In this document: piece after piece, positions 8,265-64,000 of the stretch
Numbering within the stretch: position 1 is the stretch's first letter
Layout of the letters: each line of letters starts with the position of its first letter
IMG/VR virus record: IMGVR_UViG_3300048438_000153
Span: 211,103-275,102 of that record
Length of the DNA stretch: 64,000 nucleotides
Direction: 5' to 3' (one strand)
Position numbers and translations under genes: made by a program
The notes under the pieces: generated by a model
Database searches by the model: none
What the model was told of the DNA's origin: nothing
The model's input: the letters and a program-made list of their open reading frames with translations, nothing else

Positions 8265-8289
8265 GCTGTCTCCTCTCTTGTGACCCTTA

Positions 8290-8384: not shown

Positions 8385-8800
8385 TCACGATCTGACTCAA
8401 CAACGGTTTGAGTCTCATGGGCTCTTCCCTCCGACTAGCGAAACTGAGGATAATCTTATCCCGACTAAAAGGAGGCAACCCTACTGAGCTTGAGAAAGCT
8501 CTTAGGGCAGAAACCCTCATGTGACGTAAGTCACTCGGTTGAAAAGCGTACCGATGGATCTCAATCAGTAACGAGACTCGGCAACTACTCTCTCAGAGTA
8601 AGTACCCTGTAGGTTGGTCAACTCCGTTGATAGAACCTGATAAACAGTCTGCTCTTTCTCACTCCCTTGATAGTCTCTTGTGAGCCTCTAGGTTTATTCT
8701 TTCCCTTACCTAGTAGGTTGTCTCAGATAGAAACTATCTTAGTATCTCTCTTTAGTAGAGATAGGAAGTATAGTTACTCTTCTAAGAAGAATATGAATTA
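8385..8800 (+). ncRNA. Putative structured non-coding RNA, family unknown
   Basis: No ORF >=60 aa; a run of hairpins, including GAGA and GTAA GNRA tetraloops; G-U pairs favour the + strand. Confidence 0.5.
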
Positions 8801-15419: not shown

Positions 15420-15476
15420 ATATGTACCCCTTGTGACAAGTGAGGTTATTTCTCTTAAACCAATAGAGCTGAGTAG

Positions 15477-15488
15477 ATAAAACTACTA
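15477..15488 (-). promoter_or_regulatory. Putative late promoter TA-N5-TTTAT (TAGTAGTTTTAT)
   Basis: 58 nt upstream of the start at 15419. Confidence 0.55.
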
Positions 15489-15502
15489 TCGAGGAGAAAG
15501 AG

Positions 15503-15958
15503 ATGTGGTTGACATACCTAATCTTATCTGTTTTTCTAACCACATTAGCCCACGAGTACAGTCATGTCGGTATGGCTCAACTCTTAGTAGGTGTAGATCA
15601 ATACTCCATCAAACCCTTCATCCATAAACACAAAGAATTAGGGCTTGTAGGAGGATCTGTCTCAATCACTTATAAGAGAGCAAGAACAAAGTCAGAAGAA
15701 GCTTGGATTGCCTTCGCCCCACGCCTCACTAATGCTCTCTTCTTAATACTCCTACCGTTCACTGTCGATAAAGGATCTCTAGTGATCATCTTAGTAGCTA
15801 CATTAGGATGCTACGATATGCTCAGGGGATCACTCCCCAATGACTCTGACTGTAAAGTCTATTGCAGTCATTGGAGGGTGAGTCCTTACCTAGTCAGGTA
15901 CTATCAGCTCACTCTTTCTTATGTGAGCTTCCTCACCTTTCTACTCAGGCTTTCTTAG
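15503..15958 (+). CDS. Membrane zinc metalloprotease-like protein (HExxH)
   Basis: LAHEYSH inside a hydrophobic segment, IAFAP, several TM stretches; GAGGAG RBS. Confidence 0.7.
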   Translation: MWLTYLILSVFLTTLAHEYSHVGMAQLLVGVDQYSIKPFIHKHKELGLVGGSVSITYKRARTKSEEAWIAFAPRLTNALFLILLPFTVDKGSLVIILVATLGCYDMLRGSLPNDSDCKVYCSHWRVSPYLVRYYQLTLSYVSFLTFLLRLS

Positions 15959-21369: not shown

Positions 21370-21418
21370 TTCTTGTTCTCCTAGAAAGATGGGAGGGTTC
21401 TCTATTCTTACGTTTTAT

Positions 21419-21430
21419 ATAAACACTCTA
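21419..21430 (-). promoter_or_regulatory. Putative late promoter TA-N5-TTTAT (TAGAGTGTTTAT)
   Basis: 50 nt upstream of the tail fibre start. Confidence 0.6.
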
Positions 21431-26929: not shown

Positions 26930-26938
26930 ATCGAACTC

Positions 26939-26984
26939 CTTTATATGTCTCTCTTCTTTCTCCAAGAGACATATAAAGACTTAA
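26939..26984 (-). promoter_or_regulatory. 14-bp perfect hairpin overlapping a near-consensus late promoter and the RBS of the fibre gene
   Basis: CTTTATATGTCTCT (26939-26952) / AGAGACATATAAAG (26965-26978); TTAAGTCTTTAT at 26973-26984. Confidence 0.7.
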
Positions 26985-28257: not shown

Positions 28258-28506
28258 TCAGCACTCCTCTACAAAGTAACCTTTGCTCTTGAGATAAGCC
28301 ATTAAAGAGACAATCTTATAGGGGTCATTTGACGTGACTACGAGCTTGTTCTCTTTGAGCGAACACTCCCACTCCTCTTTCTCTTTAAGGGTTCTAAGAA
28401 ACCTCTCAGAGAACTCTCCATACTGAGGGTGGACGGTCACAGAGTATTCTTTCTTAATAATTCTCTCTAACCACTTATCTGCTACTTTCTTGCTGATAAT
28501 GCTCAC
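28258..28506 (-). CDS. Hypothetical protein (MSIISKKVADKWL leader)
   Basis: GTG start overlapping the upstream TGA (GTGA); the longer track ORF is an overlap extension. Confidence 0.6.
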   Translation of the reverse strand: MSIISKKVADKWLERIIKKEYSVTVHPQYGEFSERFLRTLKEKEEWECSLKENKLVVTSNDPYKIVSLMAYLKSKGYFVEEC

Positions 28507-29072
28507 AGAAGAACTCGCCTTACTTCCTGACCCCCCCCTGTCTTTCTTAGGAGGGTGAGGTTTGAGTTGACTGTGCTTAGAGCTAGGTGGATCTCTTTCA
28601 AGTCCTCGATCTTTTCTAGTGCGCTGAGACATCTTAGAAACCTATACCTTACTTTCCCTTGAGACTCTCCGATTTCCCTAGCCGCATGGCTTTGACTAGA
28701 GTAGAGATAAAGAAGTATCATTACTCTTATATCCTTCTTATCAGAAAAGTACCGAGAAAGATTATCTTGTAAGTATGCTTCTGTGAAGACAGGTATCGTG
28801 AGCAATACTCTGAGTCTATCCATAGCCCGATTCACACGATAGTGTATGTTCGGCTGAGTGTACCCGAATATCTTACCGAGAGATGATTGAGGCACACCTT
28901 TCAAGACGTGAAGCTCGATCATATCAGCCTCCACAGGGCTAATCCGACCCATGTGGTCGAGGACACACTCAAGCCTCTCTAAAGTCTCCTCGCTTGATTC
29001 TTCTGAGTACGTTGGGAAGTTCGACATTGAGTGCTCATTAGAGAAGATTCTCTCCATGATGTGGCTATCCAT
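28503..29072 (-). CDS. Sigma-70 region-4-like tandem HTH protein (candidate phage sigma factor or regulator)
   Basis: ISPVEADMIELHVLKGVPQSSLGKIFGYTQPNIHYRVNRAMDRLR and a second HTH SQSHAAREIGESQGKVRYR. Confidence 0.65.
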   Translation of the reverse strand: MDSHIMERIFSNEHSMSNFPTYSEESSEETLERLECVLDHMGRISPVEADMIELHVLKGVPQSSLGKIFGYTQPNIHYRVNRAMDRLRVLLTIPVFTEAYLQDNLSRYFSDKKDIRVMILLYLYSSQSHAAREIGESQGKVRYRFLRCLSALEKIEDLKEIHLALSTVNSNLTLLRKTGGGQEVRRVLL

Positions 29073-31922: not shown

Positions 31923-32405
31923 CTACTCTTCAAGTCTCTTTCTATGTCTCTTGACAGCGCGGTAACAGTTAGACCTGTCAGTAAAGCCCGCTATTTTGGC
32001 GATCTTTTCATAAGACCAGCCATTTTTCTTTCTTAACTTGTAAGCGAACTCCGCTCTCTTGTCTATGAAAGGGTTAGGTAGGCTCTTGTCCTCACAATAT
32101 CTTCTGATTCGATAGTAAACCTTGTCTTTGTGAAGCCCTACAAGCTGAGAAATATCCCGAACGCTCATGCCGTTCATAAAAAGCGCATGAAGGTAGTCTC
32201 CGTTGTATTTTCTAGTAGGCAAAGGATAGGGTGCGCTCGTCTTTCTCGCGTACTTGACGACCTGATACCTCACTCTTTCTTTCTTAATGCCCAAAGCATA
32301 CGCGATCTCTCGGTATGTCATGCCCTGAGAATAGAGGCTGTAAGCCTCGAAAGAAAGGGTGTCTAGTCCTCCCAAATCTGACTCCACCAACAGGCACAAT
32401 CCCAC
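31923..32405 (-). CDS. Triple helix-turn-helix DNA-binding protein (start uncertain)
   Basis: GMTYREIAYALG, GMSVRDISQLVG, GWSYEKIAKIAG. Confidence 0.75.
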   Translation of the reverse strand: MGLCLLVESDLGGLDTLSFEAYSLYSQGMTYREIAYALGIKKERVRYQVVKYARKTSAPYPLPTRKYNGDYLHALFMNGMSVRDISQLVGLHKDKVYYRIRRYCEDKSLPNPFIDKRAEFAYKLRKKNGWSYEKIAKIAGFTDRSNCYRAVKRHRKRLEE

Positions 32406-53667: not shown

Positions 53668-54321
53668 ATGAACAGAAATCAAATGATAAGAATCGCTCAT
53701 CAAAACCCCCACATGAGGGAGCAGGTTCTTCGTATTATTCAAGCTACAGACAGAGTTGCATCAGCGATAGATCGAGCTGAAGGGCTTCTTATGAAAGAAG
53801 CATCCAAGGGGTTACCGATCTCTAAGCTTTTAAGATATGCTCAGTCAGGTATCTTCATCGTCTCAGCTTACCGCAATCAGTTCTCACGCAAGCAGAACAA
53901 AGAAAGAAACGAAGAGCTCAGGCAGATGATTCTTTCTCTCGGCGTCCCTGTCAGTAAGATTGTTAAGCTCAAGTCTCAATGGCTTGAGGAAAACTCGGAC
54001 GTACCGACTCAGGAGCAGAGCTTTGCAATCCTCGCCCCTGTCTCATGGGCAGACGCGCTCAGAATCTCAAACCACTTCGAGCAAGACGGCTTCATTTGGT
54101 CTAGCTCAACAAACCCTCTCGCTATGTATGAGCAGACAGGGAAAGTCACTTTCGCTGTAGATAAAGATATGGCAACTCAGATTAGTCTGAGCAGTGCGAA
54201 AGACCTCTATTCTAGAGGTCGAGGTGGCTCTTTCGACATCGGCTTCAATTGGAACAACCCTCTTGATTGGAATCGCACAAGCCCTATCAAGACCTCAGAC
54301 ATCTTGGCGGTTGCTAGTTAA
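53668..54321 (+). CDS. DUF3293-like protein with an IRIAHQNP leader
   Basis: IVSAYR..QNKERNEEL..W.E..EQSF..FEQDGFIW; near-consensus late motif at 53639-53650. Confidence 0.6.
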   Translation: MNRNQMIRIAHQNPHMREQVLRIIQATDRVASAIDRAEGLLMKEASKGLPISKLLRYAQSGIFIVSAYRNQFSRKQNKERNEELRQMILSLGVPVSKIVKLKSQWLEENSDVPTQEQSFAILAPVSWADALRISNHFEQDGFIWSSSTNPLAMYEQTGKVTFAVDKDMATQISLSSAKDLYSRGRGGSFDIGFNWNNPLDWNRTSPIKTSDILAVAS

Positions 54322-54637
54322 TCTGAGGCTTCGCCCAACCACTGTGGTCAAGAGATTCAACGCCCTCTCTCCATTTGTCGTTGCGAAAGAACTCTTTGCG
54401 AAGCTCTGCTTTCTTCTTCATTAAGATATTGTCGAACTTAAGTGGGTCGGTAGCTTCAGAGAGCCTTGCGCTCGCCTCCTCCCGACCGTACTTGAGCGCG
54501 ATCATGTTGAGCATGAGAGCTGTGGGCGTAGTGCCTCTCTCGGGGAACTTAGTGTTAAAGTCAGCCTTAGCTTGGCGTAAAGCCTCTAGGCGCTCTTTAC
54601 GGTTCTTTCTTCTTGCTCTGCTGTTTCGTCTACTCAT
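54314..54637 (-). CDS. Basic hypothetical protein
   Basis: AGGAGG RBS. Confidence 0.7.
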   Translation of the reverse strand: MSRRNSRARRKNRKERLEALRQAKADFNTKFPERGTTPTALMLNMIALKYGREEASARLSEATDPLKFDNILMKKKAELRKEFFRNDKWREGVESLDHSGWAKPQIN

Positions 54638-54653
54638 CGTTTCCTCCTGATTC

Positions 54654-54809
54654 TTAAAGCTGTATCTCGATCACTCGCTTTGGTTCGCGCTTGGTTTCTT
54701 TCTTCGGGCGCTCTATCGGTGGCGGTGGTATTTCAAGGTAAACCCTGTGATCCTCCTCCACCTCTCTCTGTTGACGCTCCTCCACTCTTTCAATGATAGA
54801 GATGCCCAT
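54654..54809 (-). CDS. 51-aa hypothetical protein (below the track cutoff)
   Basis: MGISIIERVEERQQREVEEDHRVYLEIPPPPIERPKKETKREPKRVIEIQL; AGGAG RBS. Confidence 0.7.
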   Translation of the reverse strand: MGISIIERVEERQQREVEEDHRVYLEIPPPPIERPKKETKREPKRVIEIQL

Positions 54810-54867
54810 CTTCTTTCTCCTATAGGTGGTCGGTTTCTTAAAGTGTAACTGTCCGAAACGGATTCGG

Positions 54868-55245
54868 TCAAACTTGAAGCTCGGGGGATCTGTTTAAACT
54901 ATTCTTTCTCAGAGTCTGCGTAGCTTTCTCTTTCCAGCCCCACACGTCTTCTATCTTGAGGTTCTTGAGCTTCTCCGCCGACTTGTCCCCTAAGTAAGAC
55001 TTGATATCCTTGTTTCTATGCGCTCGAAAGTAAGAGAAGCTCAGTCCATAGGTGACCCCCTGACCCTCAATGTCATGGACAAAAACCGCTAGATATTCTT
55101 GATAATCAGGGTACTCCCACCAACTTCCTTCAGGCTTGACCCACAAAGAAACGCCTTGCGGTAAGTCTTTAGCGTAGGGGATGCGGAAGTAGCCTCCTCT
55201 GTAGAGATCTTTCTTAACATCTATCATCACGGCCACCCCCCTCAA
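54868..55245 (-). CDS. Hypothetical protein
   Basis: ORF in the leftward early-type cluster. Confidence 0.6.
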   Translation of the reverse strand: MRGVAVMIDVKKDLYRGGYFRIPYAKDLPQGVSLWVKPEGSWWEYPDYQEYLAVFVHDIEGQGVTYGLSFSYFRAHRNKDIKSYLGDKSAEKLKNLKIEDVWGWKEKATQTLRKNSLNRSPELQV

Positions 55246-55691
55246 GTACAGTCCAACTCAAGTTGATCTCTCTTAAAGGCTTTCCAAAGAGCCTCCTCGA
55301 TGCCCTTGATGTAGGGCGCGGAGTCGTTAAGAGTCGATTTAACCCACTTAGTGCGGATACGGACTCGACCCTCTCCCTCAAGGATTGCTCTGATCTTCAA
55401 GATCTCGCTCTCGACGTCCATGCGAACCTCAGAAAACAAGGTGTACTTGACCGTCTCTTTCCGACCTACGAACATCACCTCTTTCTTTGTGAGCGTAACC
55501 ATCCGACCACCTTTTGACGGGTTCTGACGATACTCTGAAGTCGAGTAAACCTCGTCGTATCCGAACTCGTTGAGTAGTGGGTCGGCTACTCCGTTAAGTA
55601 GCCTAAAGCAGTGCTCTTGTTTCTGTGTAAGGTTGTTCATGCTTACTCTCCTAAAAGGGGAATCGACCCCCCTCTCTTCAAATGCCTTCAT
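55242..55691 (-). CDS. Hypothetical protein (alternative start at 55640)
   Basis: RBS before both ATGs. Confidence 0.65.
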   Translation of the reverse strand: MKAFEERGVDSPFRRVSMNNLTQKQEHCFRLLNGVADPLLNEFGYDEVYSTSEYRQNPSKGGRMVTLTKKEVMFVGRKETVKYTLFSEVRMDVESEILKIRAILEGEGRVRIRTKWVKSTLNDSAPYIKGIEEALWKAFKRDQLELDCT

Positions 55692-55714: not shown

Positions 55715-55745
55715 CCCAAACCCGATACCTCACCAATACCTCAAC
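55715..55745 (-). promoter_or_regulatory. Early-region repeated motif, copy 1 (GAGGTATTGGTGAGG...GGTTTGGG)
   Basis: One of five intergenic copies. Confidence 0.7.
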
Positions 55746-55747
55746 TC

Positions 55748-56149
55748 CTACTTTTGTCTCATTTTTAATAGTTCCCGAGTGATTTCAAGAGCTTGGTCTT
55801 CTTTATTAGGGTTCTTGTCGGGATGACAGAAGCTAATCAGCTTCTTTAAGAAGGATGGGCTCAAGATGATCTGACTCATCGCCTCCTCTACGTTACTCTG
55901 AGACTCTAGCAAGTCCATCTTGAGCCTGTGAGCCTCTTCTTCAAGGTCTTTCACTCTCTCCCTCAAGTGAGTCATCTCTGATGAAGATCCCTCAATCAGA
56001 AGACCCTGTATGATCTTCTGAAGCTCGAAGTATTTCTCGTCACTCTTATTCCTCTCCCAACCGTTGATCTCTTTCCAACAGTCGTAACAGTGGGCGTAAG
56101 GTGAACTCTCCATCGGGTAGGCGCACCGATCACAGTGTTGTATCTCCAT
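55748..56149 (-). CDS. Zn-finger and coiled-coil protein with a C-terminal J-domain-like HPD motif
   Basis: CDRC...CYDC; KKLISFCHPDKNP...ITRELLK. Confidence 0.65.
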   Translation of the reverse strand: MEIQHCDRCAYPMESSPYAHCYDCWKEINGWERNKSDEKYFELQKIIQGLLIEGSSSEMTHLRERVKDLEEEAHRLKMDLLESQSNVEEAMSQIILSPSFLKKLISFCHPDKNPNKEDQALEITRELLKMRQK

Positions 56150-56161
56150 CAGGTTTCTTTC

Positions 56162-56299
56162 TTAATACAAAGCTAGGATCGTCTCAACTACCGCGCAAAC
56201 CACTAAAATAAATTTCACTAATAGTGAGAGATCATACTTTCCCACCTTATGGAAATGAAACGAGAGAAAGATGATGAACACAAGCGTGAGATAAAGCAT
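56162..56299 (-). CDS. Small membrane protein (45 aa)
   Basis: MLYLTLVFIIFLSFHFHKVGKYDLSLLVKFILVVCAVVETILALY. Confidence 0.5.
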   Translation of the reverse strand: MLYLTLVFIIFLSFHFHKVGKYDLSLLVKFILVVCAVVETILALY

Positions 56300-56310
56300 A
56301 GCGATCACTC

Positions 56311-56646
56311 TTAAAGAGGGAGAGAGAAAGCGAGACAGATGACCGCTAGGTAGAAAGATATCATCTTCATGTTGCCCATGCGATCAGACTCTAAGACTAA
56401 CATACAAGACTCAGGGTCACTGAAGATCACCTCTTTCCTGAAGACCTGACCTGTCTCAGAAATCACGAGCAACTCTTCACCTTCCTCAACCGCGCTCTCG
56501 AAGACCTCTTGAGTTAGGTAAGTCTTGGAATCGGGCTTACTCTTGATGACCTCCTGTATGCGGAGGATTAGGTTATGGAGCGCCTTCTTCTCTTTCTGTC
56601 TGAAGAAAATAGAGGCGCAGAACAGAAACAGAGTTAAGTAGTACAT
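56311..56646 (-). CDS. Membrane hypothetical protein
   Basis: Hydrophobic termini. Confidence 0.65.
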   Translation of the reverse strand: MYYLTLFLFCASIFFRQKEKKALHNLILRIQEVIKSKPDSKTYLTQEVFESAVEEGEELLVISETGQVFRKEVIFSDPESCMLVLESDRMGNMKMISFYLAVICLAFSLPL

Positions 56647-56659
56647 GATTTAACCACTC

Positions 56660-56974
56660 TTAAATAGTATAGGACAGGAGCACTAGAGAGGATTGTGCAA
56701 TCACCATAGCCCTCTGATAGTTTAACATCAAAGAAGCATCATGAAGATGATCCCAAAACTCTCTCTCAGAGAAAGGCAGAATCCCACCTCGCTCCTTAAA
56801 GACATACAGAGCCTCCGCTTTAAGAAGAGAAAGCGTCTCTAAGTCTTTGAGGTAAAACGACGCGATAATCGAGAGTAGGAGGAGCACTGAGATTGTGAGA
56901 CTGCTATTCACGACACAGCAGAAAGCAAAACCGTACTGCGCCCACAAGATCCAACTGTTCTTATCATTGTTCAT
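56660..56974 (-). CDS. Membrane hypothetical protein
   Basis: Hydrophobic segments. Confidence 0.65.
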   Translation of the reverse strand: MNNDKNSWILWAQYGFAFCCVVNSSLTISVLLLLSIIASFYLKDLETLSLLKAEALYVFKERGGILPFSEREFWDHLHDASLMLNYQRAMVIAQSSLVLLSYTI

Positions 56975-56987
56975 TGTATTTTCTCTT

Positions 56988-57491
56988 TCAAGCCAAAGCT
57001 AAGATTTTAATCTCTTCGTTATCCCAAAGAACCTTCCCTCCCGAAACCTTCTCATAAGCCTCTCTCAAGAAAGGATTAGAGGGGTAAGAGGATGATCCGC
57101 TGATGATCCCACACCACTTGAACTTGTAAGACTCTCGATCCGAGATCTTCTCGTAGAAAGAAGTCTTGGAAGAATACTCTCCCATCCAATGATGAATCCC
57201 CGCAGACCAAGTAGATCGCCAATTTTTAGTGCGCTTGAAGTGCTTCCTATCCCGCGCCTTTCTGTTAAGAGTCCATCCGTTCAGACGCGATACAAGACGG
57301 AGGTTCATGCTCGCGTTCCCATGACCCATCGACTTATCATCCCGCGTCTGCGTAGAAGAAAGAAGAATCGCCACATTGTCTGAAAGGAGGATGTGGTAAA
57401 TCCCCGCTCGACCATCAACGCGCTCCCAATCAAAGTTCTCAGAAGTTAACCAACCCTCTAGATCGTCTCGGGTGATATTAACGTAACTCAT
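56988..57491 (-). CDS. Hypothetical protein
   Basis: AAGGAG RBS, 167 aa. Confidence 0.75.
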   Translation of the reverse strand: MSYVNITRDDLEGWLTSENFDWERVDGRAGIYHILLSDNVAILLSSTQTRDDKSMGHGNASMNLRLVSRLNGWTLNRKARDRKHFKRTKNWRSTWSAGIHHWMGEYSSKTSFYEKISDRESYKFKWCGIISGSSSYPSNPFLREAYEKVSGGKVLWDNEEIKILALA

Positions 57492-57548
57492 CTGATCTCC
57501 TTAGTGTGTGTGAAGCATCAGTTCTTAAGGCTGATGCTTTAAGTGGTT

Positions 57549-58160
57549 TTATTTATATGGGTTTAAACCCTTCAAACCGCTCCAATTGGTGAAGACTCTC
57601 TCGTGGGTTCCCACGCCATGTAAGAGATGCCCCGATATTCCATAAGCAGAGATATAGTCAACCACCATTTCTTTTATTTCTCCTGAAAGACAGAGCCTCT
57701 TTACTCCTATGAAATAGGGGTGGCTGACTCTCTTAAAATGACCAATGTCAGCTAAGATAATGTCGGACTTCTCTACTTCTTTCTTGTGGGCAAAAACACT
57801 CCCCTTCTCTACTTCTGTGACCCAATCAACTAGAGTCTCACAAAGACACTCAAGAGCACAATAATCAAGGGTATTGTCCTCGCCCACATGATCATTACAA
57901 ACTAGAACATTCTTAGCATGAGTTCTGTTGTCGTCTACAGCCATGTTCTTGTGTTCAAAGTCGATTCTCAGAGAGTCAGGTCTTTTCATTACTCTGACTG
58001 AAAGGTGAGAGTCAGATCCGATAAATCCATTTTTCCTTAGCAGGATGCCCGCCACCACTGAAAACTCTTTACCTTCACAGAAAGTATCGACGCCGATAAC
58101 TTTGACCATCTCGCGTACAAAGTTGCTTCTGCTCATTTCTTTCTCCTTAAGATAATACAC
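57549..58160 (-). CDS. Hypothetical protein (probable start MSRSNF)
   Basis: AAGGAG RBS before the internal ATG. Confidence 0.65.
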   Translation of the reverse strand: MYYLKEKEMSRSNFVREMVKVIGVDTFCEGKEFSVVAGILLRKNGFIGSDSHLSVRVMKRPDSLRIDFEHKNMAVDDNRTHAKNVLVCNDHVGEDNTLDYCALECLCETLVDWVTEVEKGSVFAHKKEVEKSDIILADIGHFKRVSHPYFIGVKRLCLSGEIKEMVVDYISAYGISGHLLHGVGTHERVFTNWSGLKGLNPYK

Positions 58161-58641
58161 CTGTGATTGAAGCCCAAGACACCCACTCTTTGGTCATTTC
58201 GTTAAAGTCACCGAAAACCGCGAGAGGCGTCACAACATTGACACGAAAAATACCCTCTGCCCCCTCGTCTACGATCAGTTCAGACCCAACTTTGAGATCG
58301 AAGCTCTTATAGCTCTCCACGCTCGATTGGAAAGCCTTCCTGATCTCAACATCTGACGACCCCCTCTCGACATACACAGGTAAGAATGGAATCCACTCAG
58401 TGGAAGTGGGGGACGAAGGATCAGGCTCAAAGCGAACTCCTACCTCAAAGAGATCGAAGCCCTCTTTCTCAGGGTAGTCGTGGTAAGCCATAAGACAGCT
58501 CGTGTAGCTCTCCATCACACACCCACCCCCATAGATCTTTCTTAAGCAGACTAAAGTATGTGATACGAATCCTGTCGCTAAGTCATGGCGAAACATCGCA
58601 TCCACTAAAGTATTGTTGACTCGTTCGTTGTAGGCAGTCAT
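58147..58641 (-). CDS. Hypothetical protein
   Basis: 164-aa ORF downstream of a repeated-motif copy. Confidence 0.65.
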   Translation of the reverse strand: MTAYNERVNNTLVDAMFRHDLATGFVSHTLVCLRKIYGGGCVMESYTSCLMAYHDYPEKEGFDLFEVGVRFEPDPSSPTSTEWIPFLPVYVERGSSDVEIRKAFQSSVESYKSFDLKVGSELIVDEGAEGIFRVNVVTPLAVFGDFNEMTKEWVSWASITGVLS

Positions 58642-58687
58642 ATAAATCTCTTTCTCTAGAAGCCCTCGTATGGATCTTGATCTAGTC

Positions 58688-58732
58688 GTTACTCTTAGTT
58701 ACCTAATCCTGATACCTCACCAATACCTCAAC
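58688..58732 (-). promoter_or_regulatory. Early-region repeated motif, copy 2
   Basis: GTTGAGGTATTGGTGAGGTATCAGGATTAGGTAACTAAGAGTAAC. Confidence 0.7.
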
Positions 58733-58777
58733 AATTCGACGCGCCACTATGTGTCAGAAAACCCCCTCAATCTCACA

Positions 58778-58897
58778 CTACCCGATCAGAGTAGGCTTGC
58801 CATTGTGTGAAAACTTCGCTCCAAAAGGGAAGACCTCTAATACTTCGTGAGCCTCCGCGTTCTTCTGAATCATCTTAAAGAACTTTTCGTCTGTCAT
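58778..58897 (-). CDS. 39-aa hypothetical protein
   Basis: MTDEKFFKMIQKNAEAHEVLEVFPFGAKFSHNGKPTLIG; starts just after the HNH stop. Confidence 0.4.
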   Translation of the reverse strand: MTDEKFFKMIQKNAEAHEVLEVFPFGAKFSHNGKPTLIG

Positions 58898-58901
58898 TTA
58901 C

Positions 58902-59369
58902 TTATCTTTCTGACTCAAGCCAACTCAAGTCCAATGTCCATTGATGCTGTGACCTCTCAGCGTGTTTCTGAAAGACCTCTACGATGTAAGCCTCAAGCTC
59001 ATCTACGGTCATCTCATTCTGCTCAAGAATATGGATCAACACTTTCTCTCTCGCTTGAGGCTTCTCTACAGAAAGAGTGCGTCCAAGATGCTTCGCCTTG
59101 TGACAAGTAGGGCAGAGCGCGATCAGACCCTTTAAAGTCTGCTCTTTCTTTCTGTCATCGTATGACCAAATCTCGTGACACTCGACAATACTCTTAGGCT
59201 TTCCGTTGTATCTCCTCCAGCCTACTCCGCCACAGATCTCACATTTGTGACCCGCGCTCTCATAACAAGCCTTCCTTAACTTATCCCACTCTTTCTTAGA
59301 GAGGTTCGCCTCAGAACGTAGGTTGTCCCCCCATGAGGAACTAGGCACAAGCTCAATACTCAACTTCAT
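58902..59369 (-). CDS. HNH-like endonuclease
   Basis: CEICGG..ECHEIW..LIALCPTCHKAKH. Confidence 0.85.
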   Translation of the reverse strand: MKLSIELVPSSSWGDNLRSEANLSKKEWDKLRKACYESAGHKCEICGGVGWRRYNGKPKSIVECHEIWSYDDRKKEQTLKGLIALCPTCHKAKHLGRTLSVEKPQAREKVLIHILEQNEMTVDELEAYIVEVFQKHAERSQHQWTLDLSWLESER

Positions 59370-59390
59370 AGTCTCTTCCTTTCGTTGTGA

Positions 59391-59433
59391 TTACTCTTAC
59401 TCTCCCAAACCTGTTGACTCACCAATACTTCAA
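59391..59433 (-). promoter_or_regulatory. Early-region repeated motif, copy 3
   Basis: TTGAAGTATTGGTGAGTCAACAGGTTTGGGAGAGTAAGAGTAA. Confidence 0.65.
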
Positions 59434-59445
59434 GTCACCAAACGC

Positions 59446-59493
59446 AAAAAAGCGCGGTGTAAAGTGCCGAATATCAACACTTTACACCGCGCT
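59446..59493 (-). terminator. Intrinsic terminator
   Basis: 16-bp perfect stem AGCGCGGTGTAAAGTG/CACTTTACACCGCGCT, extended by G-U pairs on the minus strand, followed by a U-tract. Confidence 0.8.
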
Positions 59494-59519
59494 CCTCACT
59501 TCAAACTCCGCTCGATCTG

Positions 59520-59708
59520 TCAGGCGATCTTCTTAGACTCCCTCTCCTCTCGTCTCTTGCCCTCTTCACATGAACAGTAAGGTGAGTCATTCAGGTGGTG
59601 GTCTAAGTTTGCCCTGAAAGAGAAATCAAAGAAGCCTCTCTTCTTCAATCCACCCTCGCACAAACCACATTCTTTCTTAATGTTTTCTTTCTTCATATCT
59701 ATCCTCAC
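59520..59708 (-). CDS. Small zinc-ribbon-like protein
   Basis: CGLC...YCSCEEG. Confidence 0.6.
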   Translation of the reverse strand: MRIDMKKENIKKECGLCEGGLKKRGFFDFSFRANLDHHLNDSPYCSCEEGKRREERESKKIA

Positions 59709-62242
59709 TTCTTAAGGAATCCATAGCTGTAAACTCCATGCTCAAGACTCTTTCCTAGACGACTGTGCTTCTCTCTTAAAGCATCCCACTTCGCTTTCAA
59801 CACAGGGTCGGTGTACCACATCTTCTTGTGCTGATAGATACCCGCATCCCACGCGCCTAAGTGAAGGTCAATGCTCTTTCCCCTCTCTACCACATGGTCA
59901 GTCTTAGACCTCAAGGCAAAGCTCTCAACGAATAACTCTCTCAAGTCAGTCATGATCTCTTTAGCCAAGTCAGAGAGATTAAGAGTCGGAAGCACATGAG
60001 AGAAGTAAGGGTCGCCGTTCTTTCTCCACTCAGGTGTCACATCCTCTCCTAACTCAATCCCTTTCTCGTAAGGAATCGGATTACTCTTAGCATCTCGGTA
60101 AAGAGCGCGAGCTTGCTTGTGTGATCCGTAAAGATCAAGAGCCTCTTTCCGAGTCATCCAAAAGAAATGGTTGTGGATGTTGTGAGTCTGACCCTTGTAC
60201 TCAACTCCTCTCATCGCGCTCATGTTATTAGAGATATGTAGGAGAGCATAAACGTGACAGTCATCAACCCACTGCTCATAGCCTTCTTTCTCAGTCTGAG
60301 GAGCTAGATACTCGTCCTTGTTGTTGATCCAAGTGTCTGTTGAGAGCTTGCGAGCAGAGTAAAGGGCGATAGCTCGTCTAAACCCTTCACCTGCAAGAAT
60401 GGGGATAGAGCGATTGTTTGAGTAAGGGGGCAAGGGGGCAAAGTAAACAAGCTGATTTTGGTAAGGGGAGTTGGAGTCGTTTACAAAGTAAACTAGTCCT
60501 TTTGGATCATGCTTTATTTTTTCACCTGAAACCATGAGTCCACTTCGACAGGTCAGATACGCAGACTTTTTAGCGGTGCTGTTCTTTAACCCTACCCATT
60601 TAGAAGCCTCTCTTTCAGTTGCCGAATACAAGTTTTTTCTCCTTAGAGAAACAACGCTTTCTTCTGCTATATCTTTCAGAGTGAGGGGAAGGTCTTGATT
60701 AGCTTCAGTAGTACCCTCGTTCCATAAAGTGAAGCTAATCGCCCAAGACCCTTTCACATCAGCGAAATGAGAGGCTTGGAACATGAAGCCCGACTGATAA
60801 GAATAACGCTCGTACCAATAGGGGCGAAACTTAGCGAAAGAGCCACTCACCATGTAAAGGATAGGCGAGAACACTCCCACACTCTTATCCTTGAACCCAT
60901 ACTCAGACGCTACCTGCTCACATTGAAATAAGAACTGAGCATAGAGCTGTTGAGAGCAAGCCCCTAACTTAGCCCCCTTCATCTCTTGGTTTACAATGGT
61001 ACTCGCTACTCCCTTTCGAGATTCTGCACTCTTTACCCCTGCTGTGGCATAAGGGGGGTTGATCAGAAACACCAATCGCTTCCCACTCTCCGCGCCCTTT
61101 CTCAGCATCTTCTTAACTGAAAGAGGTAACACGTTCTCGCGCTCCGAAAAGAAAGGGCTATCAGACTCAGGGTTCAAGAAATCATACTGAAAGACCTCCG
61201 CGCCCTCATTGTAACCCTCTCTAACAATCGCCTTCACGTCAGGTGCTTCCGCCGTAGAAAGAATAAGATTCTCGAAGTCAAAGTCGCGAGTCAAGTTCCC
61301 CGTCCCCGCGCAACAATCCCACACAATACACTCATCTCTCCAACCCTCCCCCAACACCTTGTCCATCTCAGAATGTGCCTCGTTTACCCATAACGTAGGC
61401 GTGTAGAAAGCACCCTGACGACGACGTGTGTCATCCTCAATGATCCTGTCTCTCATCGACACAAGCTCATCAATCTCTTTCGCGGATAAACCACGCTCTC
61501 GGCGCTCAAAGAAAGCCTCCATCGCCTTGAGATTCAGACGGTACTCCTTGCCCCCCATAACGAGCGTTTCTTTCTTCGAGGGATGCGCGTAAGCAAAGTG
61601 ATCATCTTCCTCAGAGTAAAACACACAACCAAAGAAAATGTCCGTCATCTCAACAGCCTCATAAAGATCTTCAGGGATGATGTGCTCCACCCAATACTGA
61701 TACATCGCTGAGATGTTCTTCTTAGATGGTTTCACCTTCAAAAGACAACCCTCTGATAACTGCTCGCAGAGACTCTTCAAGTGATGACCGTCAACTCCCA
61801 ACGTAGGCTCAAGATGAGCTGAGTGAGACACCTTAAGAGATGCGTCAGGACTCGATGGACGACGACTCCAATCAACCTCCGCGTTCAAGAACTCTTTCAC
61901 GCTCTCGAAAGAAATCGCGAAACAATGCGACTCGTCTCCAATAAAGATCACATTAGGAAGATCGTCTCCGCGCTCCTCAAATCGCTTGCAATAGTAAAGC
62001 GCCTGAGCCAACACCGATGAACGCACCTCTTCTTTCTTAAGGTCTGTGCCAAACTTCGTCTCAAGCAAAACACGCACCGAAGACTTCGTAGGTGACTCCC
62101 AAGAAAGAACTCCGTCCGTTGCCCAACCCGATCCCTTAAGACTCTTAAAGTGCTCGTCCGTTGCCTCCTCAAGAAGCCTACGGAAATGTGTAGTTACGTC
62201 CATCTCTGAATGGAATCTCATACTCAATCTCTTTCTCGACAC
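59705..62242 (-). CDS. Type IIG-like fused restriction endonuclease / N6-adenine methyltransferase
   Basis: N-terminal TDGV...LLETK...LAQALYY; GAFYTP, WDCCAGTGNL (motif I), INPPY (motif IV); long C-terminal TRD-like region. Confidence 0.8.
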   Translation of the reverse strand: MSRKRLSMRFHSEMDVTTHFRRLLEEATDEHFKSLKGSGWATDGVLSWESPTKSSVRVLLETKFGTDLKKEEVRSSVLAQALYYCKRFEERGDDLPNVIFIGDESHCFAISFESVKEFLNAEVDWSRRPSSPDASLKVSHSAHLEPTLGVDGHHLKSLCEQLSEGCLLKVKPSKKNISAMYQYWVEHIIPEDLYEAVEMTDIFFGCVFYSEEDDHFAYAHPSKKETLVMGGKEYRLNLKAMEAFFERRERGLSAKEIDELVSMRDRIIEDDTRRRQGAFYTPTLWVNEAHSEMDKVLGEGWRDECIVWDCCAGTGNLTRDFDFENLILSTAEAPDVKAIVREGYNEGAEVFQYDFLNPESDSPFFSERENVLPLSVKKMLRKGAESGKRLVFLINPPYATAGVKSAESRKGVASTIVNQEMKGAKLGACSQQLYAQFLFQCEQVASEYGFKDKSVGVFSPILYMVSGSFAKFRPYWYERYSYQSGFMFQASHFADVKGSWAISFTLWNEGTTEANQDLPLTLKDIAEESVVSLRRKNLYSATEREASKWVGLKNSTAKKSAYLTCRSGLMVSGEKIKHDPKGLVYFVNDSNSPYQNQLVYFAPLPPYSNNRSIPILAGEGFRRAIALYSARKLSTDTWINNKDEYLAPQTEKEGYEQWVDDCHVYALLHISNNMSAMRGVEYKGQTHNIHNHFFWMTRKEALDLYGSHKQARALYRDAKSNPIPYEKGIELGEDVTPEWRKNGDPYFSHVLPTLNLSDLAKEIMTDLRELFVESFALRSKTDHVVERGKSIDLHLGAWDAGIYQHKKMWYTDPVLKAKWDALREKHSRLGKSLEHGVYSYGFLKK

Positions 62243-62270
62243 ACCCTCTTATGAGCGCGCCTGTTTAATC

Positions 62271-62315
62271 GTTACTCTTAGTTACCCAACTCTGTCACCT
62301 CACCAATACCTCAAC
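62271..62315 (-). promoter_or_regulatory. Early-region repeated motif, copy 4
   Basis: GTTGAGGTATTGGTGAGGTGACAGAGTTGGGTAACTAAGAGTAAC. Confidence 0.7.
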
Positions 62316-62336
62316 CCCAACTAACCCCTAAACAAC

Positions 62337-62960
62337 CTAAACCACTCGGTAAAATCCCCTCGAAACACGCTCAATCAAACCGAGATCACACAACGCTCCC
62401 AAACCACCTCCAACCCGACCATACGACATACCCTCAATAGTAATGTCCCTCCTGAAAAAAGTAGCTCCCTTACCCAAAGATTCAAGCTCAGACCACACAA
62501 CATCTCTGCCCCTTCTCTTCGCCCCCATATCCTTAAGAAATGCATAGACTGTCGTTGTAGACTTACCACACTCATTCGCCAAATCTTGTACCCTCTCGCC
62601 CGATAAATACCTCTCTATTAAACCTTCACTCAATAAAGCCTCATGCCTAATCTTCTTATTCAGACCCTTTATGTCCCTCTTGCCCTCTCTCAAAGCCCCA
62701 TACACTAAAGAGGGACGCACACCAAAATGTGAGGACAAGTCAGCTACGCCCATACCCAAATCAAAAGCCTCGACAATCTGCGCCCTCAATGCCTTCTTAT
62801 TCTTGTAAACACCATGACGCTTCAAGACATTTAAGACTGTCCTATACGATACTCCATAATCCCGCGAAATGTCCTTTGCACCTTTACCCCCCGAGTAAGA
62901 CCGACAAACATTCTTCTCTTGCTTCTCCGTAAAAGCCCTACGGTTATCTCCCAATTTCAT
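62337..62960 (-). CDS. Multi-HTH DNA-binding protein with a C-terminal winged-helix-like segment
   Basis: Three HTH units (e.g. GAKDISRDYGVSYRTVLNVL); AGGAGG RBS before ATG 62960. Confidence 0.75.
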   Translation of the reverse strand: MKLGDNRRAFTEKQEKNVCRSYSGGKGAKDISRDYGVSYRTVLNVLKRHGVYKNKKALRAQIVEAFDLGMGVADLSSHFGVRPSLVYGALREGKRDIKGLNKKIRHEALLSEGLIERYLSGERVQDLANECGKSTTTVYAFLKDMGAKRRGRDVVWSELESLGKGATFFRRDITIEGMSYGRVGGGLGALCDLGLIERVSRGFYRVV

Positions 62961-63032
62961 GTGACACCTCCTGAATGTGTTTTGAGCTAATGAGTGAGAA
63001 TATATGAAAACTCCCTCCCTGATGACCACTTT

Positions 63033-63060
63033 CCCAAACCTGTTACCTCACCAATACCCC
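63033..63060 (-). promoter_or_regulatory. Early-region repeated motif, copy 5
   Basis: GGGGTATTGGTGAGGTAACAGGTTTGGG. Confidence 0.65.
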
Positions 63061-63431
63061 CACTCAAAATCAAACACGAAAAATCCAAAACCAAATAATA
63101 TATGGCTGACGCTTTATAAGAAAAACAATCCTAAAAATCTCTCGTGTAAGACCCCCCCTCTCTGAGAGGAAATACTAAGGAAGTCTATCCGCACAAGAGA
63201 AAAGGAAGGTGAGAAAGAAACAGGGTTCAAACATGGTTCAGAATCAGGCTTCTCATTTTCAATGCGTTTTCAATATGGCTTTTCGGGGGTCCCGACCCAC
63301 TCCGCCCACTTTTTGGCGCGAATCTGTGAGGTCGAAAGCGTGAACTCAAGGATCGCGCCGAGCCACACGCCTAGTTAGAGAGGGTTACGCCCCTATATAG
63401 ACCCTGACCCCCCCTCATCCCCTGAGCGCGC

Positions 63432-63563
63432 GCCGAACACTCCTTCTAGCCTGACCTCACCCTTGAACGAGCCGAACACTCCTTCTAGCCTGACCTCACC
63501 CTTGAACGAACCGAGCCTCAAGCTGACCCCGCCCTTGAACGAGCCGAGCCTCAAGCTGACCCC
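63432..63563. repeat. Tandem repeats (2 x 39 bp, then ~1.6 x 33 bp) sharing a CCCTTGAACGARCCGA core
   Basis: 63432-63470 equals 63471-63509; 63510-63542 is partly repeated at 63543-63563. Confidence 0.85.
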
Positions 63564-63610
63564 AACCACCCCACATGACCTCCGAGCGCCAACCTGAGCC
63601 GACCTCTAGT

Positions 63611-63655
63611 CATCAGCTAGAGGAGAGGTCAGCTCAACCCCTCCTCTAGCTGATG
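63611..63655. other. 15-bp perfect inverted repeat
   Basis: CATCAGCTAGAGGAG / CTCCTCTAGCTGATG; extends with G-U pairs on the minus strand. Confidence 0.75.
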
Positions 63656-64000
63656 GCTGAGCTAACCCCGAGCTGACCTGATTACTCCCTCACTCAACCC
63701 CTAGCCCTGATCCGACCTTGACCCCCTCCCCTGACAGAAAGGAGCGCCCCTCCCTCTCGCTTCTTTCTGTTGATCCCCTAGCTCGCCTGATCCTCTACGA
63801 GAAATAGGAATCTGTAGGTAACTAAGGGGAGTGAACTCATAAGGGAAGGGGCGCGTCAGCGACCCAACCTCGACCCTCAGCCTACCACGCCCTATCCGAT
63901 CCCTCAGTGAGTCCCAACCGCGCCATAGAACGCGAGCAGATGCTCCACGTCCTCGATGAGTGCCTCCCTTGCACTCATCACTGTAGGTAGCTTCGAGAGG

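What the first reader, a model, noticed from the sequence alone, without database searches (positions are those of the whole stretch)
55715..63060. Five copies of a ~30-45-bp motif head the leftward early-type genes
Seen: GTATTGGTGAG is invariant in five intergenic sites (starting 55715, 58688, 59391, 62271, 63033), followed by a R-G-(G/T)-TT-R-GG-like block and, in three copies, TAAGAGTAA. All copies have the same orientation, and one directly follows a strong terminator. It does not match TTGACA/TATAAT well. Inference: a strong early promoter class for an unusual host sigma or phage factor, an operator for the multi-HTH protein at 62337-62960, and/or recombination joints for cassette exchange.
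Basis: partly seen in the sequence, partly recalled or inferred. Interest (0 to 1): 0.6.

Follow-up and report, generated by a model that had tools for sequence, protein, structure and literature searches.

The report
Repeated promoter cassette of jumbo phage
A 30-45 bp sequence that heads each leftward transcription unit here is one of 22 near-identical copies in an uncultured marine jumbo phage; it most likely acts as a phage-specific promoter, and comparison with relatives shows single genes were swapped in and out at these copies.

Summary
All five copies are exact, lie on the minus strand, sit between genes, and point the same way as the ORF 48-100 nt downstream.

The window is the end of a 275-kb IMG/VR contig. 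A sister contig closes it into a circle of about 286 kb. That circle holds 22 copies, all within one ORFan-rich arc of about 43 kb. PWM scores are 38-50 bits, and no site scores between 12 and 37 bits.

Across 36 copies (own plus diverged metagenomic relatives) the skeleton is TTGAGGTATTGGTGrGnnAnCAGrwwTGGG. It has no TATAAT-like -10 box. The genome has essentially no canonical sigma-70 promoters, no detectable RNA polymerase and no sigma region 2.

In one subclass, a leader hairpin supported by covariation starts exactly 8 nt after TGGG and runs into the ribosome-binding site.

In relatives, genes between or beside copies are replaced, inserted or deleted, with breakpoints at the motif.

Best reading: a PeSL-like promoter/leader cassette with a non-sigma-70 core that also serves as a recombination joint. 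What recognises it is unknown; the adjacent 207-aa tandem-HTH protein is a candidate. No RNA data exist, so transcription starts and early timing are inferred.

The parts
55715..55744 (-). Motif copy 1 (30-nt core). It begins 4 nt after the stop codon of ORF 55748-56149. The start codon of ORF 55242-55691 lies 53 nt after the core's first base. No TAAGAGTAA box.
   Evidence: PWM 43.0 bits
58689..58731 (-). Motif copy 2: core 58702-58731 (TAGG in place of TGGG) plus TAAGAGTAA at 58689-58697. It heads a tightly packed run of seven ORFans, 58641 down to 55748.
   Evidence: 44.6 bits. In one search, place 58704 reads C on the plus strand (which gives TGGG) in the contigs laid there, but these may come from other copies of the motif.
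59391..59433 (-). Motif copy 3: core 59404-59433 (TTGAAG variant) plus TAAGAGTAA at 59391-59399. It heads the HNH endonuclease gene 58902-59369.
   Evidence: PHROG 5200, E 3.8e-44; 37.7 bits. The orthologous copy in relative L150 reads TTGAGG.
59441..59494 (-). Intrinsic terminator (20-bp stem with 10 G-C pairs, then a T-run). It ends the unit of the methyltransferase-like gene and the 62-aa ORF, 16 nt before copy 3.
62272..62314 (-). Motif copy 4: core 62285-62314 plus TAAGAGTAA at 62272-62280. It heads the 838-aa ORF (ATG at 62221).
   Evidence: 42.7 bits
63033..63062 (-). Motif copy 5 (core only; its first six bases read TGGGGG). It heads the tandem-HTH gene. A weak sigma-70-like pair (TGGTCA, 18 nt, TATATT) lies just downstream at 63028-62999.
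   Evidence: 40.9 bits
62337..62960 (-). 207-aa protein with three tandem helix-turn-helix units. It is the candidate binder of the motif (inference).
   Evidence: Tc3 transposase DNA-binding domain, E 3e-4; 2lvs; NCBIfam Cbp1, CRISPR-repeat-binding protein, E 1.1e-9 over profile positions 3-134 of 135, below the family cut-off; low-confidence model with helices in three-helix groups
59705..62221 (-). 838-aa ORF, probably an N6-adenine DNA methyltransferase-family protein. No Pfam, PHROG, NCBIfam or PDB sequence match.
   Evidence: no matches; Atlas feature score 0.99 to clusters named site-specific adenine DNA methyltransferase; relatives at 65-75% identity
58902..59369 (-). HNH endonuclease gene, a one-gene unit between copies 3 and 2.
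55748..58641 (-). Seven closely packed ORFs without family matches, downstream of copy 2.
54314..55691 (-). Last four ORFs of the leftward block, downstream of copy 1.
63750..63870 (-). Remnant of the longer B-type module. The conserved upstream block (…CCTTATGAGTTCAC…ACAGATTCCTATTTCTC) is present, but the core that follows it in the 12 B-type copies beyond the window's end is missing.

Best explanation
Best reading. The motif is the core of a phage-specific promoter-plus-leader cassette. It starts each transcription unit in the ORFan-rich, probably early, arc of a roughly 286-kb marine jumbo phage.

Shown:
- There are 22 all-or-none copies, confined to one arc of about 43 kb.
- Each copy is intergenic and co-oriented with an ORF 48-100 nt downstream, on whichever strand that ORF lies.
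- The conserved blocks keep fixed spacing: TTGAGG, TATTGGTG, CAG, TGGG.
- In the B-type copies, a hairpin with compensatory changes starts exactly 8 nt after TGGG and ends at the ribosome-binding site.

Inferred:
- Transcription starts in the conserved TA(A/G)G, 5-8 nt after TGGG. TTGAGG then sits at -35 with a 17-nt spacer, and rwwTGG sits where a -10 box would be.
- Because this is not a sigma-70 -10 box and no RNA polymerase gene is detectable, host core polymerase is probably directed here by a phage specificity factor. This could be a sigma-4-only 'minimal sigma' or a tandem-HTH protein such as the 207-aa product of 62337-62960.

Second role, shown by comparison. Because identical 30-45 bp copies flank single genes, homologous recombination between copies swaps, inserts and deletes gene cassettes, as PeSLs do in T4-type phages.
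For: Numbers and distribution:
- 5 exact copies in the window, far above chance.
- 10 A-type copies in the contig, and 12 B-type copies in the 10.8-kb segment that closes the contig into a circle.
- PWM scores 37.7-49.5 bits, with nothing between 12 and 37 bits. That is about 37 bits of information against about 15 bits needed to pick 22 sites in 286 kb.

Orientation and position:
- Every copy heads a co-oriented ORF, mostly unrelated ORFans.
- Divergent pairs of copies lie 177-238 nt apart.
- A terminator lies 16 nt upstream of copy 3.

Conservation: across 36 copies, including 14 from relatives whose flanking genes are 59-84% identical in protein, the blocks are invariant and change is confined to positions 15, 17, 18, 20 and 24-26.

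Leader hairpin:
- 91.6% of cells paired, against 50-70% when the partner is slid.
- The start is fixed 8 nt after TGGG in 13 of 13 leaders, and stem position 4 is C-G, G-C or A-T.

Missing alternatives:
- Only 1 intergenic sigma-70-like site at 10 of 12 or better in 275 kb.
- No PF00940, PF00562, PF00623 or sigma region 2, and no T7-type motif B outside the DNA polymerase.
- The phage is related to Atu_ph07/SCTP-2, which belong to group 2.2 jumbo phages, described as lacking an RNA polymerase but encoding sigma factors (PMC7824862).
- Two other promoter-like classes head other modules.

Cassette exchange:
- The gene between copies 8708 and 8265 (genome coordinates) is replaced in L146 by an unrelated ORF, with flanks at 92% nucleotide and 84% protein identity.
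- At the 24.2-kb copy the three variants are X_G-motif-Y, X1-motif-Y and X1-motif-X2-motif-Y.
Against: - There is no transcript evidence. No RNA run holds the sequence, so the start site, strength and timing are not shown.
- No recognised sigma, activator or polymerase accounts for the core. If a phage-encoded factor is required, something must transcribe or deliver that factor first. The tandem-HTH gene itself sits behind a copy.
- A-type leaders, including all five in the window, show no significant structure.
- The very high similarity of copies could owe something to gene conversion rather than to recognition alone.
- The cassette swaps were documented at copies outside the window. The only relatives covering window copies (L150 and the roughly 95% strain in run X17) are collinear.
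Confidence: 0.62

Rival explanations
1. The motif is chiefly an operator: a binding site for the 207-aa tandem-HTH protein or another of the phage's HTH proteins, which shuts off or switches on the region. The real polymerase-contacting elements would be only the flanking few bases. This can coexist with the best explanation.
For: - The protein has three HTH units like Cbp1 and Tc3, which read long DNA repeats through successive grooves.
- The motif is 30 nt long and its information exceeds what site selection needs.
- The A-type core contains GAGGTA twice, 11 nt apart.
- The protein's own gene carries a copy, which would allow autoregulation.
- Four distant relatives without the motif gave no match to the protein.
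Against: - The second GAGGTA repeat is not kept in B-type copies.
- There is no binding data.
- The negative search in relatives had no positive control.
- An operator alone does not explain the fixed distance to the leader hairpin or the lack of any other promoter in these gaps.
Confidence: 0.3
2. The motif is the promoter of a phage-encoded RNA polymerase of an unrecognised kind, hidden among the giant ORFans and possibly carried in the virion. Initiation would be at the GGG of TGGG, laid out like T7/SP6-type promoters: a long specificity block, a short A/T-rich stretch, then +1 GGG.
For: - The layout and all-or-none conservation resemble single-subunit polymerase promoters.
- The genome lacks canonical sigma-70 promoters.
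- Many very large ORFs have no family match at all, including ones of 4204 and 2884 aa.
Against: - No PF00940, PF00562 or PF00623 match.
- No T7-type motif B outside the DNA polymerase, and no NADFDGD-like motif.
- The related jumbo phage group is described as polymerase-less (PMC7824862).
- The fixed hairpin start and the conserved TA(A/G)G fit a start further downstream better.
Confidence: 0.12
3. The copies are purely recombinational or selfish DNA: the target or footprint of a homing endonuclease or a small mobile element. Any link to expression would be incidental.
For: Breakpoints of gene replacement coincide with copies. An HNH endonuclease gene forms a one-gene cassette between two copies.
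Against: - Strict co-orientation with the downstream gene on both strands and a narrow distance to start codons.
- No terminal inverted repeats or target-site duplications.
- The conserved downstream ribosome-binding context and leader hairpin.
- Selection keeps the blocks invariant in relatives whose genes have diverged to 59-84% protein identity.
Confidence: 0.06
4. The motif works at the RNA level, as a processing site, a binding site for a translational repressor, or an antiterminator within longer read-through transcripts.
For: The motif is G/U/A-rich and unstructured, which would suit single-strand recognition. It lies in what would be 5' leaders or inter-cistronic RNA.
Against: - No Rfam family matches.
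- Folding is no better than shuffles.
- The distance to the start codon varies from 48 to 100 nt.
- One copy sits just after a strong terminator, so little read-through RNA would reach it.
- Copies also occur in divergent pairs in promoter-like arrangement.
Confidence: 0.05

Closest known systems
PeSLs (promoter-early stem-loop cassettes) of T4-type phages (Arbiol et al. 2010, PMC2839356; Comeau et al. 2014, PMC4122927)
   Same: - Short repeated regulatory cassettes concentrated in a hyperplastic, ORFan-rich region.
- Each ends in a Shine-Dalgarno sequence and the start codon of the next gene.
- Copies flank single genes.
- Gene replacement, insertion and deletion between relatives have breakpoints at the copies.
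- The phage is a distant relative of the T4 superfamily (UvsX, clamp, clamp loader).
   Different: - PeSL promoters are sigma-70-like (TTGACA, 17 nt, TATAAT or close variants). This core has no such -10 box.
- The PeSL stem-loop lies upstream of the promoter and acts as a terminator. Here only one of five window copies has an upstream terminator, and the conserved hairpin of the B-type copies lies downstream, in the leader.
- The conserved block here is longer and far more uniform.
- Mini-circles were not, and could not be, tested.
T7/T3/SP6-type promoters of single-subunit phage RNA polymerases
   Same: - A discrete, all-or-none family of about 20 long sites with information well above what site selection needs.
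- A specificity block, then a short A/T-rich stretch, then GGG.
   Different: - No such polymerase gene is detectable in the phage.
- The conserved block reaches further upstream (27 nt before the GGG).
- The leader geometry suggests a start downstream of the GGG.
T4 MotA-dependent middle promoters (MotA box at -30 plus a sigma-70 -10 box; sigma appropriation with AsiA) (PMC2988021)
   Same: A conserved box in the -35 to -20 region replaces a canonical -35 contact and would be read by a phage DNA-binding protein that retargets host polymerase.
   Different: - MotA promoters keep a TAnnnT -10 box; these do not.
- No AsiA or MotA C-terminal domain homologue was found (no phage positive control).
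- The box sequence is unrelated.
Cbp1/Cbp2, archaeal CRISPR-repeat-binding proteins, and the Tc3 transposase bipartite DNA-binding domain (for the 207-aa protein only)
   Same: Tandem HTH units joined by linkers, which read an extended repeated DNA sequence. Sequence similarity: NCBIfam Cbp1 E 1.1e-9; PDB 1u78 E 3e-4; 2lvs E 2e-3.
   Different: - The score is far below the Cbp1 family cut-off (38 against 140 bits).
- It is a phage protein, and no CRISPR array is involved.
- Binding to the motif is untested.

Membership tests
PeSL (promoter-early stem-loop) cassette | Located preferentially in hyperplastic regions, next to ORFans | tested here: met
   All 22 copies lie in one arc of about 43 kb (266.8 kb, through the junction, to 24.2 kb). 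The genes there are almost all without family matches.
PeSL (promoter-early stem-loop) cassette | Contains a sigma-70-like early promoter (-35, 17 nt, -10 TATAAT-like) | tested here: not met
   TTGAGG fits a -35 box. At the -10 position, however, the copies read rwwTGG. The scan finds no sigma-70 match in the motif.
PeSL (promoter-early stem-loop) cassette | Stem-loop terminator just upstream of the promoter | tested here: not met
   Only copy 3 has an upstream terminator. The other four window copies have none. B-type copies have G-runs and a conserved block upstream, and their hairpin is downstream.
PeSL (promoter-early stem-loop) cassette | Shine-Dalgarno sequence and start codon of the next gene at the 3' end | tested here: met
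PeSL (promoter-early stem-loop) cassette | Indels and replacements between related phages have breakpoints at the cassettes | tested here: met
   Two loci, three relatives. Both loci lie outside the window.
PeSL (promoter-early stem-loop) cassette | Recombination between neighbouring copies yields mini-circles | not testable with these tools
   This needs inverse PCR on infected cells or long-read viromes. A motif-to-motif joint (58732 to 63028) seen in two runs rests on 30 letters and is ambiguous.
Single-subunit (T7-like) RNA polymerase promoter | The phage encodes a T7-like RNA polymerase | tested here: not met
   No PF00940 match at E up to 1. Motif B occurs only in the DNA polymerase. Caveat: a very divergent enzyme could escape both tests.
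Single-subunit (T7-like) RNA polymerase promoter | Conserved block of about 23 nt ending at the initiating G residues | tested here: inconclusive
   The layout is compatible, but the start site is unknown.
Housekeeping sigma-70 promoter | -10 hexamer with A at position 2 and T at position 6, 16-18 nt after a TTGACA-like hexamer | tested here: not met
T4-type MotA/AsiA middle promoter | MotA and AsiA homologues plus a sigma-70 -10 box | tested here: not met
   No PF09010 or PF09158 match, and no -10 box. The searches had no phage positive control.

The most novel reading that the evidence does not exclude
A T4-related jumbo phage lineage, from a group thought to rely on host sigma-70 for its first genes, has replaced ordinary early promoters with its own 30-nt recognition sequence of about 37 bits. 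An unrecognised specificity system would read it. Candidates are a sigma-4-only or tandem-HTH factor (possibly delivered with the DNA) that substitutes for -35 and -10 recognition, or a cryptic RNA polymerase among the giant ORFans. The same sequence would double as the crossover site that shuffles early genes.
Probability: 0.2. Interest if true: 0.75.

Novelty: new variant of a known kind. Interest (0 to 1): 0.5.

Why it matters
If the reading holds, it extends PeSL-type modular shuffling from cultured T4-type phages to an uncultured marine jumbo phage. It also shows the shuffling does not depend on sigma-70 promoters: any long, uniform expression signal can serve as a portable crossover site.

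The core gives a concrete, testable handle on how jumbo phages without a polymerase gene direct transcription of their first genes. There is a defined 30-nt target and a short list of candidate readers: the 207-aa tandem-HTH protein and two sigma-4-like proteins.

It is also practical for annotation. The motif marks 22 transcription-unit starts and delimits the variable gene arc of this phage and its relatives in seawater metagenomes.

Tried and rejected
- **RNA polymerase hypothesis for the ORF behind copy 4.** Rejected. The Atlas places it with adenine DNA methyltransferase-named clusters. It has no Pfam, PHROG, NCBIfam, PDB or phage tblastn match.
- **Search for any polymerase or sigma region 2.** All empty: PF00940, PF00562, PF00623, PF04542, T7 motif B, a DxDGD scan, and PHROG/Pfam scans of about 20 of the largest ORFs. 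The 1844-aa ORF in the window is tail-fibre-like.
- **Sigma-54, sigma-32, sigma-28, ECF and Bacteroidetes consensus sequences.** Compared by eye with the skeleton; none fits. This is my own comparison, not a tool test.
- **Structured RNA.** No Rfam family. Folding of the five window elements with their leaders is no better than shuffles.
- **Motif in more distant relatives.** The methyltransferase-like gene has relatives at 65-75% identity, but these lack the motif and carry TATAAA/TATAAT-like boxes instead. The ends of a 296-kb relative hold no analogous long repeat.
- **Motif elsewhere.** IMG/VR holds it only in this phage's three records. None of 185,579 prokaryote genomes has the skeleton.
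- **Expression data.** None of the 22 listed runs is RNA. Contigs of four seawater runs laid on 6,000 bases (58001-64000) only show unitigs breaking at the repeat and a collinear strain at about 95% identity. The joint 58732 to 63028 rests on 30 letters and was not interpreted.
- **AlphaFold model of the 207-aa protein.** Run without an alignment, it gave pLDDT 58, so no fold search was made.
- **Large protein searches.** The search for homologous proteins and the search of protein representatives were not used.
- **MotA and AsiA.** No match.
Full report
**1.

GTATTGGTGAG occurs five times exactly in the window. All five are on the minus strand, with 5' ends at 55739, 58726, 59428, 62309 and 63057. 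With one mismatch allowed there are six matches against 0.99 expected, and none of 100 shuffles reaches six.

Read on the minus strand, each copy is a 30-nt core: TTGAG, the 11-mer, four variable bases, CAG, three A/T-rich bases, then TGGG. Three copies continue with TAAGAGTAA.

Each copy lies in an intergenic gap and points the same way as an ORF that starts 48-100 nt downstream behind a Shine-Dalgarno sequence. Five of the seven gaps of at least 45 nt in the leftward block carry a copy.

Copy 3 sits 16 nt behind a 20-bp terminator hairpin with a T-run. The sigma-70 scan finds nothing in the motif, and the region has no more sigma-70-like sites than shuffles do.

**2. What the window belongs to**

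The window is the last 64 kb of a 275,102-bp IMG/VR viral contig.

- *Gene content.* It encodes ribonucleotide reductase, a UvsX-like recombinase, clamp and clamp loader, a family-A-like DNA polymerase, a large terminase, baseplate proteins and many very large ORFans.
- *Relatives.* One conserved protein links it to Agrobacterium phage Atu_ph07 and Salicola phage SCTP-2. These belong to jumbo phage group 2.2 of Iyer et al., described as lacking an RNA polymerase but encoding sigma factors (PMC7824862).
- *Source.* It occurs in many seawater metagenomes.
- *Closure.* A near-identical sister contig (G001) runs off the right end, crosses 10,818 bp that the contig lacks, and re-enters at position 1. 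L090:1-3723 equals genome 3723-1 at 100%. The map therefore closes to about 285,920 bp.

**3. The whole family**

The contig has 10 copies of the window's type (A): five in the window, four at 5.8-8.7 kb on the minus strand, and one at 24.2 kb on the plus strand heading a plus-strand gene.

The 10.8-kb bridging segment has 12 more copies (type B), on both strands. Each is co-oriented with its ORF, and some form divergent pairs 177-238 nt apart.

A weight matrix built from the copies scores all 22 at 37.7-49.5 bits and nothing else above 12 bits. The matrix was built from the same sites, but the empty range is still informative. Information is about 37 bits, against about 15 bits needed to specify 22 sites in 286 kb.

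All copies lie in one arc from 266.8 kb, across the junction, to 24.2 kb. The arc is filled with ORFans, an HNH endonuclease, a methyltransferase-like protein and HTH proteins.

**4. Conservation in relatives**

IMG/VR holds the motif only in this phage's three records, and no prokaryote genome has the skeleton.

A scan of JGI metagenome contigs found six contigs of diverged relatives with 14 further copies. Across all 36 copies:

- G3, TATTGGT (positions 7-13), C21, G23 and G30 never vary.
- T1, T2, A4, G5, G6, G14, G16, A19, A22, T27, G28 and G29 vary in one to five copies.
- Change is concentrated at positions 15, 17, 18, 20 and 24-26.

The genes beside these copies are only 59-84% identical in protein, so the blocks are under selection. 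A-type and B-type cores are found with either type of leader in relatives (for example in L147). The two types are therefore not separate families.

More distant relatives, with the methyltransferase-like protein at 65-75% identity, lack the motif and have TATAAA/TATAAT-like boxes in front of that gene. A 296-kb relative has no analogous long repeat in the 80 kb examined.

**5. Evidence that it is an expression signal**

Beyond position and orientation, the B-type copies have a leader hairpin.

- On a MAFFT alignment of nine leaders, 91.6% of cells pair, against 50-70% when partners are slid, with two pairs changed on both sides.
- Anchored on the sequence, the stem starts exactly 8 nt after TGGG in 13 of 13 leaders from this phage and two relatives. 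Stem position 4 is C-G, G-C or A-T, and position 6 is G-C, A-T or G-U.
- The 3' arm runs into ACAGAAAGG, the ribosome-binding site.

A hairpin held at a fixed distance from the motif and ending at the ribosome-binding site is what a 5'-terminal leader structure looks like. It suggests a start in the conserved TA(A/G)G, 5-8 nt after TGGG. On that numbering, TTGAGG is a fair -35 box with a 17-nt spacer, but the -10 position reads rwwTGG. This is inference.

The motif itself is almost free of C and does not fold. Rfam finds only two tRNAs nearby.

**6. Who reads it**

The genome has one intergenic sigma-70-like site at 10 of 12 or better in 275 kb.

No RNA polymerase domain, T7-type motif, sigma region 2, AsiA or MotA domain was found. 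These are negative results with limited sensitivity, and many giant ORFs remain unexplained.

The phage does encode several sigma-4-like or tandem-HTH proteins:

- window 28503-29072 (sigma-70/ECF superfamily, region 4, E 9e-10)
- window 31923-32405
- genome 29440-30243
- the 207-aa protein at 62337-62960

The best matches of the 207-aa protein are the CRISPR-repeat-binding protein Cbp1 (three HTH units; E 1e-9, below cut-off) and the Tc3 transposase DNA-binding domain. Four motif-less relatives gave no match to it (no positive control). It is the obvious candidate reader or regulator, but nothing here tests binding. The single-sequence model was too poor to use.

Two other promoter-like motifs head other modules. 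TCTGATAT has 9 intergenic copies, all co-oriented 32-101 nt before starts that include the DNA polymerase and UvsX-like genes. CTTTATA(T/G) has 8 of 10 intergenic copies so placed. This fits a programme with several promoter classes, in which the motif studied here serves the ORFan arc.

**7. Recombination joints**

*First locus (8.3-8.7 kb).* Aligning relative L146 with the genome shows 92% identity up to and through the copy at 8708. It then shows no similarity across the one gene that follows (126 aa here, 110 aa there, unrelated). Identity resumes just before the next copy at 8265, and the gene after it is 84% identical in protein.

*Second locus (24.2 kb).* Three arrangements exist:

- This phage has X_G-motif-Y.
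- L154 has X1-motif-Y.
- L153 has X1-motif-X2-motif-Y.

Y is conserved at 59-75%, X1 at 69%, and X_G is unrelated to X1. L153 and L154 thus differ by exactly one gene-plus-motif cassette. This phage differs from both upstream of the motif's first base.

L148 is a mosaic of the B-type segment with one inverted block.

This is the pattern described for PeSLs in T4-type phages (PMC2839356, PMC4122927). These cases are at copies outside the window. The relatives that cover window copies are collinear.

**8. Comparison and verdict**

The element works like a PeSL: a regulatory cassette that heads ORFans and serves as a crossover site. It fails two defining PeSL features, namely the sigma-70-like promoter and the upstream stem-loop. 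I therefore file it as a new variant of that kind rather than a member.

It looks like a T7-type promoter family in its uniformity and layout, but no such polymerase is detectable.

The most likely mechanism is host core polymerase directed by a phage specificity factor to a start a few bases after TGGG. Recombination between copies then shuffles the genes. Start site, timing, strength and reader are all inferred.

Interest is moderate. The general phenomenon, however, is known, and there is no expression evidence.

Noticed in passing
window 64000 / genome ends; L090:3724-14541: The 275,102-bp contig is not complete at its ends. Sister contig IMGVR_UViG_3300047375_001083 bridges right end to left end through 10,818 bp that the contig lacks, which gives a circular map of about 285,920 bp. 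The missing segment is highly repetitive (12 B-type motif modules, 12-nt coding repeats, 13-nt tandem repeats), and this probably broke the assembly.
   Followed up: yes
window 1751 (-), 37964 (+), 43448 (+); also genome 28423, 82041, 84532, 86201, 96138, 209564: A second promoter-like motif, T-rich then TCTGATAT(A/G). It has 9 intergenic copies, all co-oriented 32-101 nt before a start codon. The genes headed include the DNA polymerase and the UvsX-like recombinase. No conserved -35 box. Possibly the middle or replication class.
   Followed up: partly
window 26978 (-), upstream of the 1844-aa tail-fibre-like ORF; also genome 8970, 27206, 31904, 143305, 184614, 201326, 202616: A third candidate motif, CTTTATA(T/G). 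It has 10 intergenic copies, 8 with a co-oriented start within 200 nt. Possibly a late class.
   Followed up: partly
whole genome: Canonical sigma-70 promoters are almost absent. There are 12 sites at 10 of 12 or better in 275 kb, and only one is intergenic; that one overlaps a TCTGATAT site.
   Followed up: partly
window 63063-63900 (-): A G-rich stretch of about 800 nt with only one short ORF call (58 aa). It holds three tandem 33-39-nt repeats (about 63440-63550), long runs of GGGG/GAGG, and a decapitated B-type upstream block at 63750-63870. Its function is unknown. It marks the boundary between the A-type and B-type parts of the arc.
   Followed up: partly
L090 (bridging segment), upstream of B-type copies: B-type copies carry a further conserved block about 20-75 nt upstream (…CCTTATGAGTTCAC…TTAGTTACCTACAGATTCCTATTTCTC, then a G-run). 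In this phage the leader variant TTAGTAGGTGTC… occurs only on the minus strand, and the variant A(G/A)ATAAGGTGTG… only on the plus strand.
   Followed up: partly
window 28503-29072 (-), 31923-32405 (-); genome 29440-30243 (+): Three further small proteins with sigma-4-like or tandem HTH domains. The 189-aa one lies beside the clamp-loader gene and matches sigma-70/ECF region 4 (E 9e-10). It may be the 'minimal sigma' of this phage group.
   Followed up: partly
genome 41034-53648 (-) and 9780-18434 (+); window 10206-26965: Very large ORFs. The 4204-aa and 2884-aa ORFs have no Pfam or PHROG match at all. In the window there are three adjacent ORFs of 1737 aa (SNF2-related), 1804 aa (Mtd_N and fibre-like domains) and 1844 aa (matches a solved short tail fibre).
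   Followed up: partly
genome 8264-8644 (-) versus L153/L154: The 126-aa ORF in the replaced cassette behind the copy at 8708 is weakly similar (26% over 70 aa, E 0.004 in a tiny database) to gene X1. In relatives, X1 sits before the 24.2-kb copy. This may be the same cassette in a different motif-headed slot.
   Followed up: no
window 58732 / 63028: Contigs in two seawater runs join the copy at 58702-58731 to the copy at 63033-63062, skipping 4,295 bp. Only 30 letters lie on the shorter side. It could be a deletion variant between two copies, another locus, or a repeat-graph artefact.
   Followed up: no
L092:5925-5997 and 6376-6448 (genome about 25.9-26.4 kb): Two tRNA genes lie just beyond the plus-strand A-type copy at 24.2 kb.
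   Followed up: no
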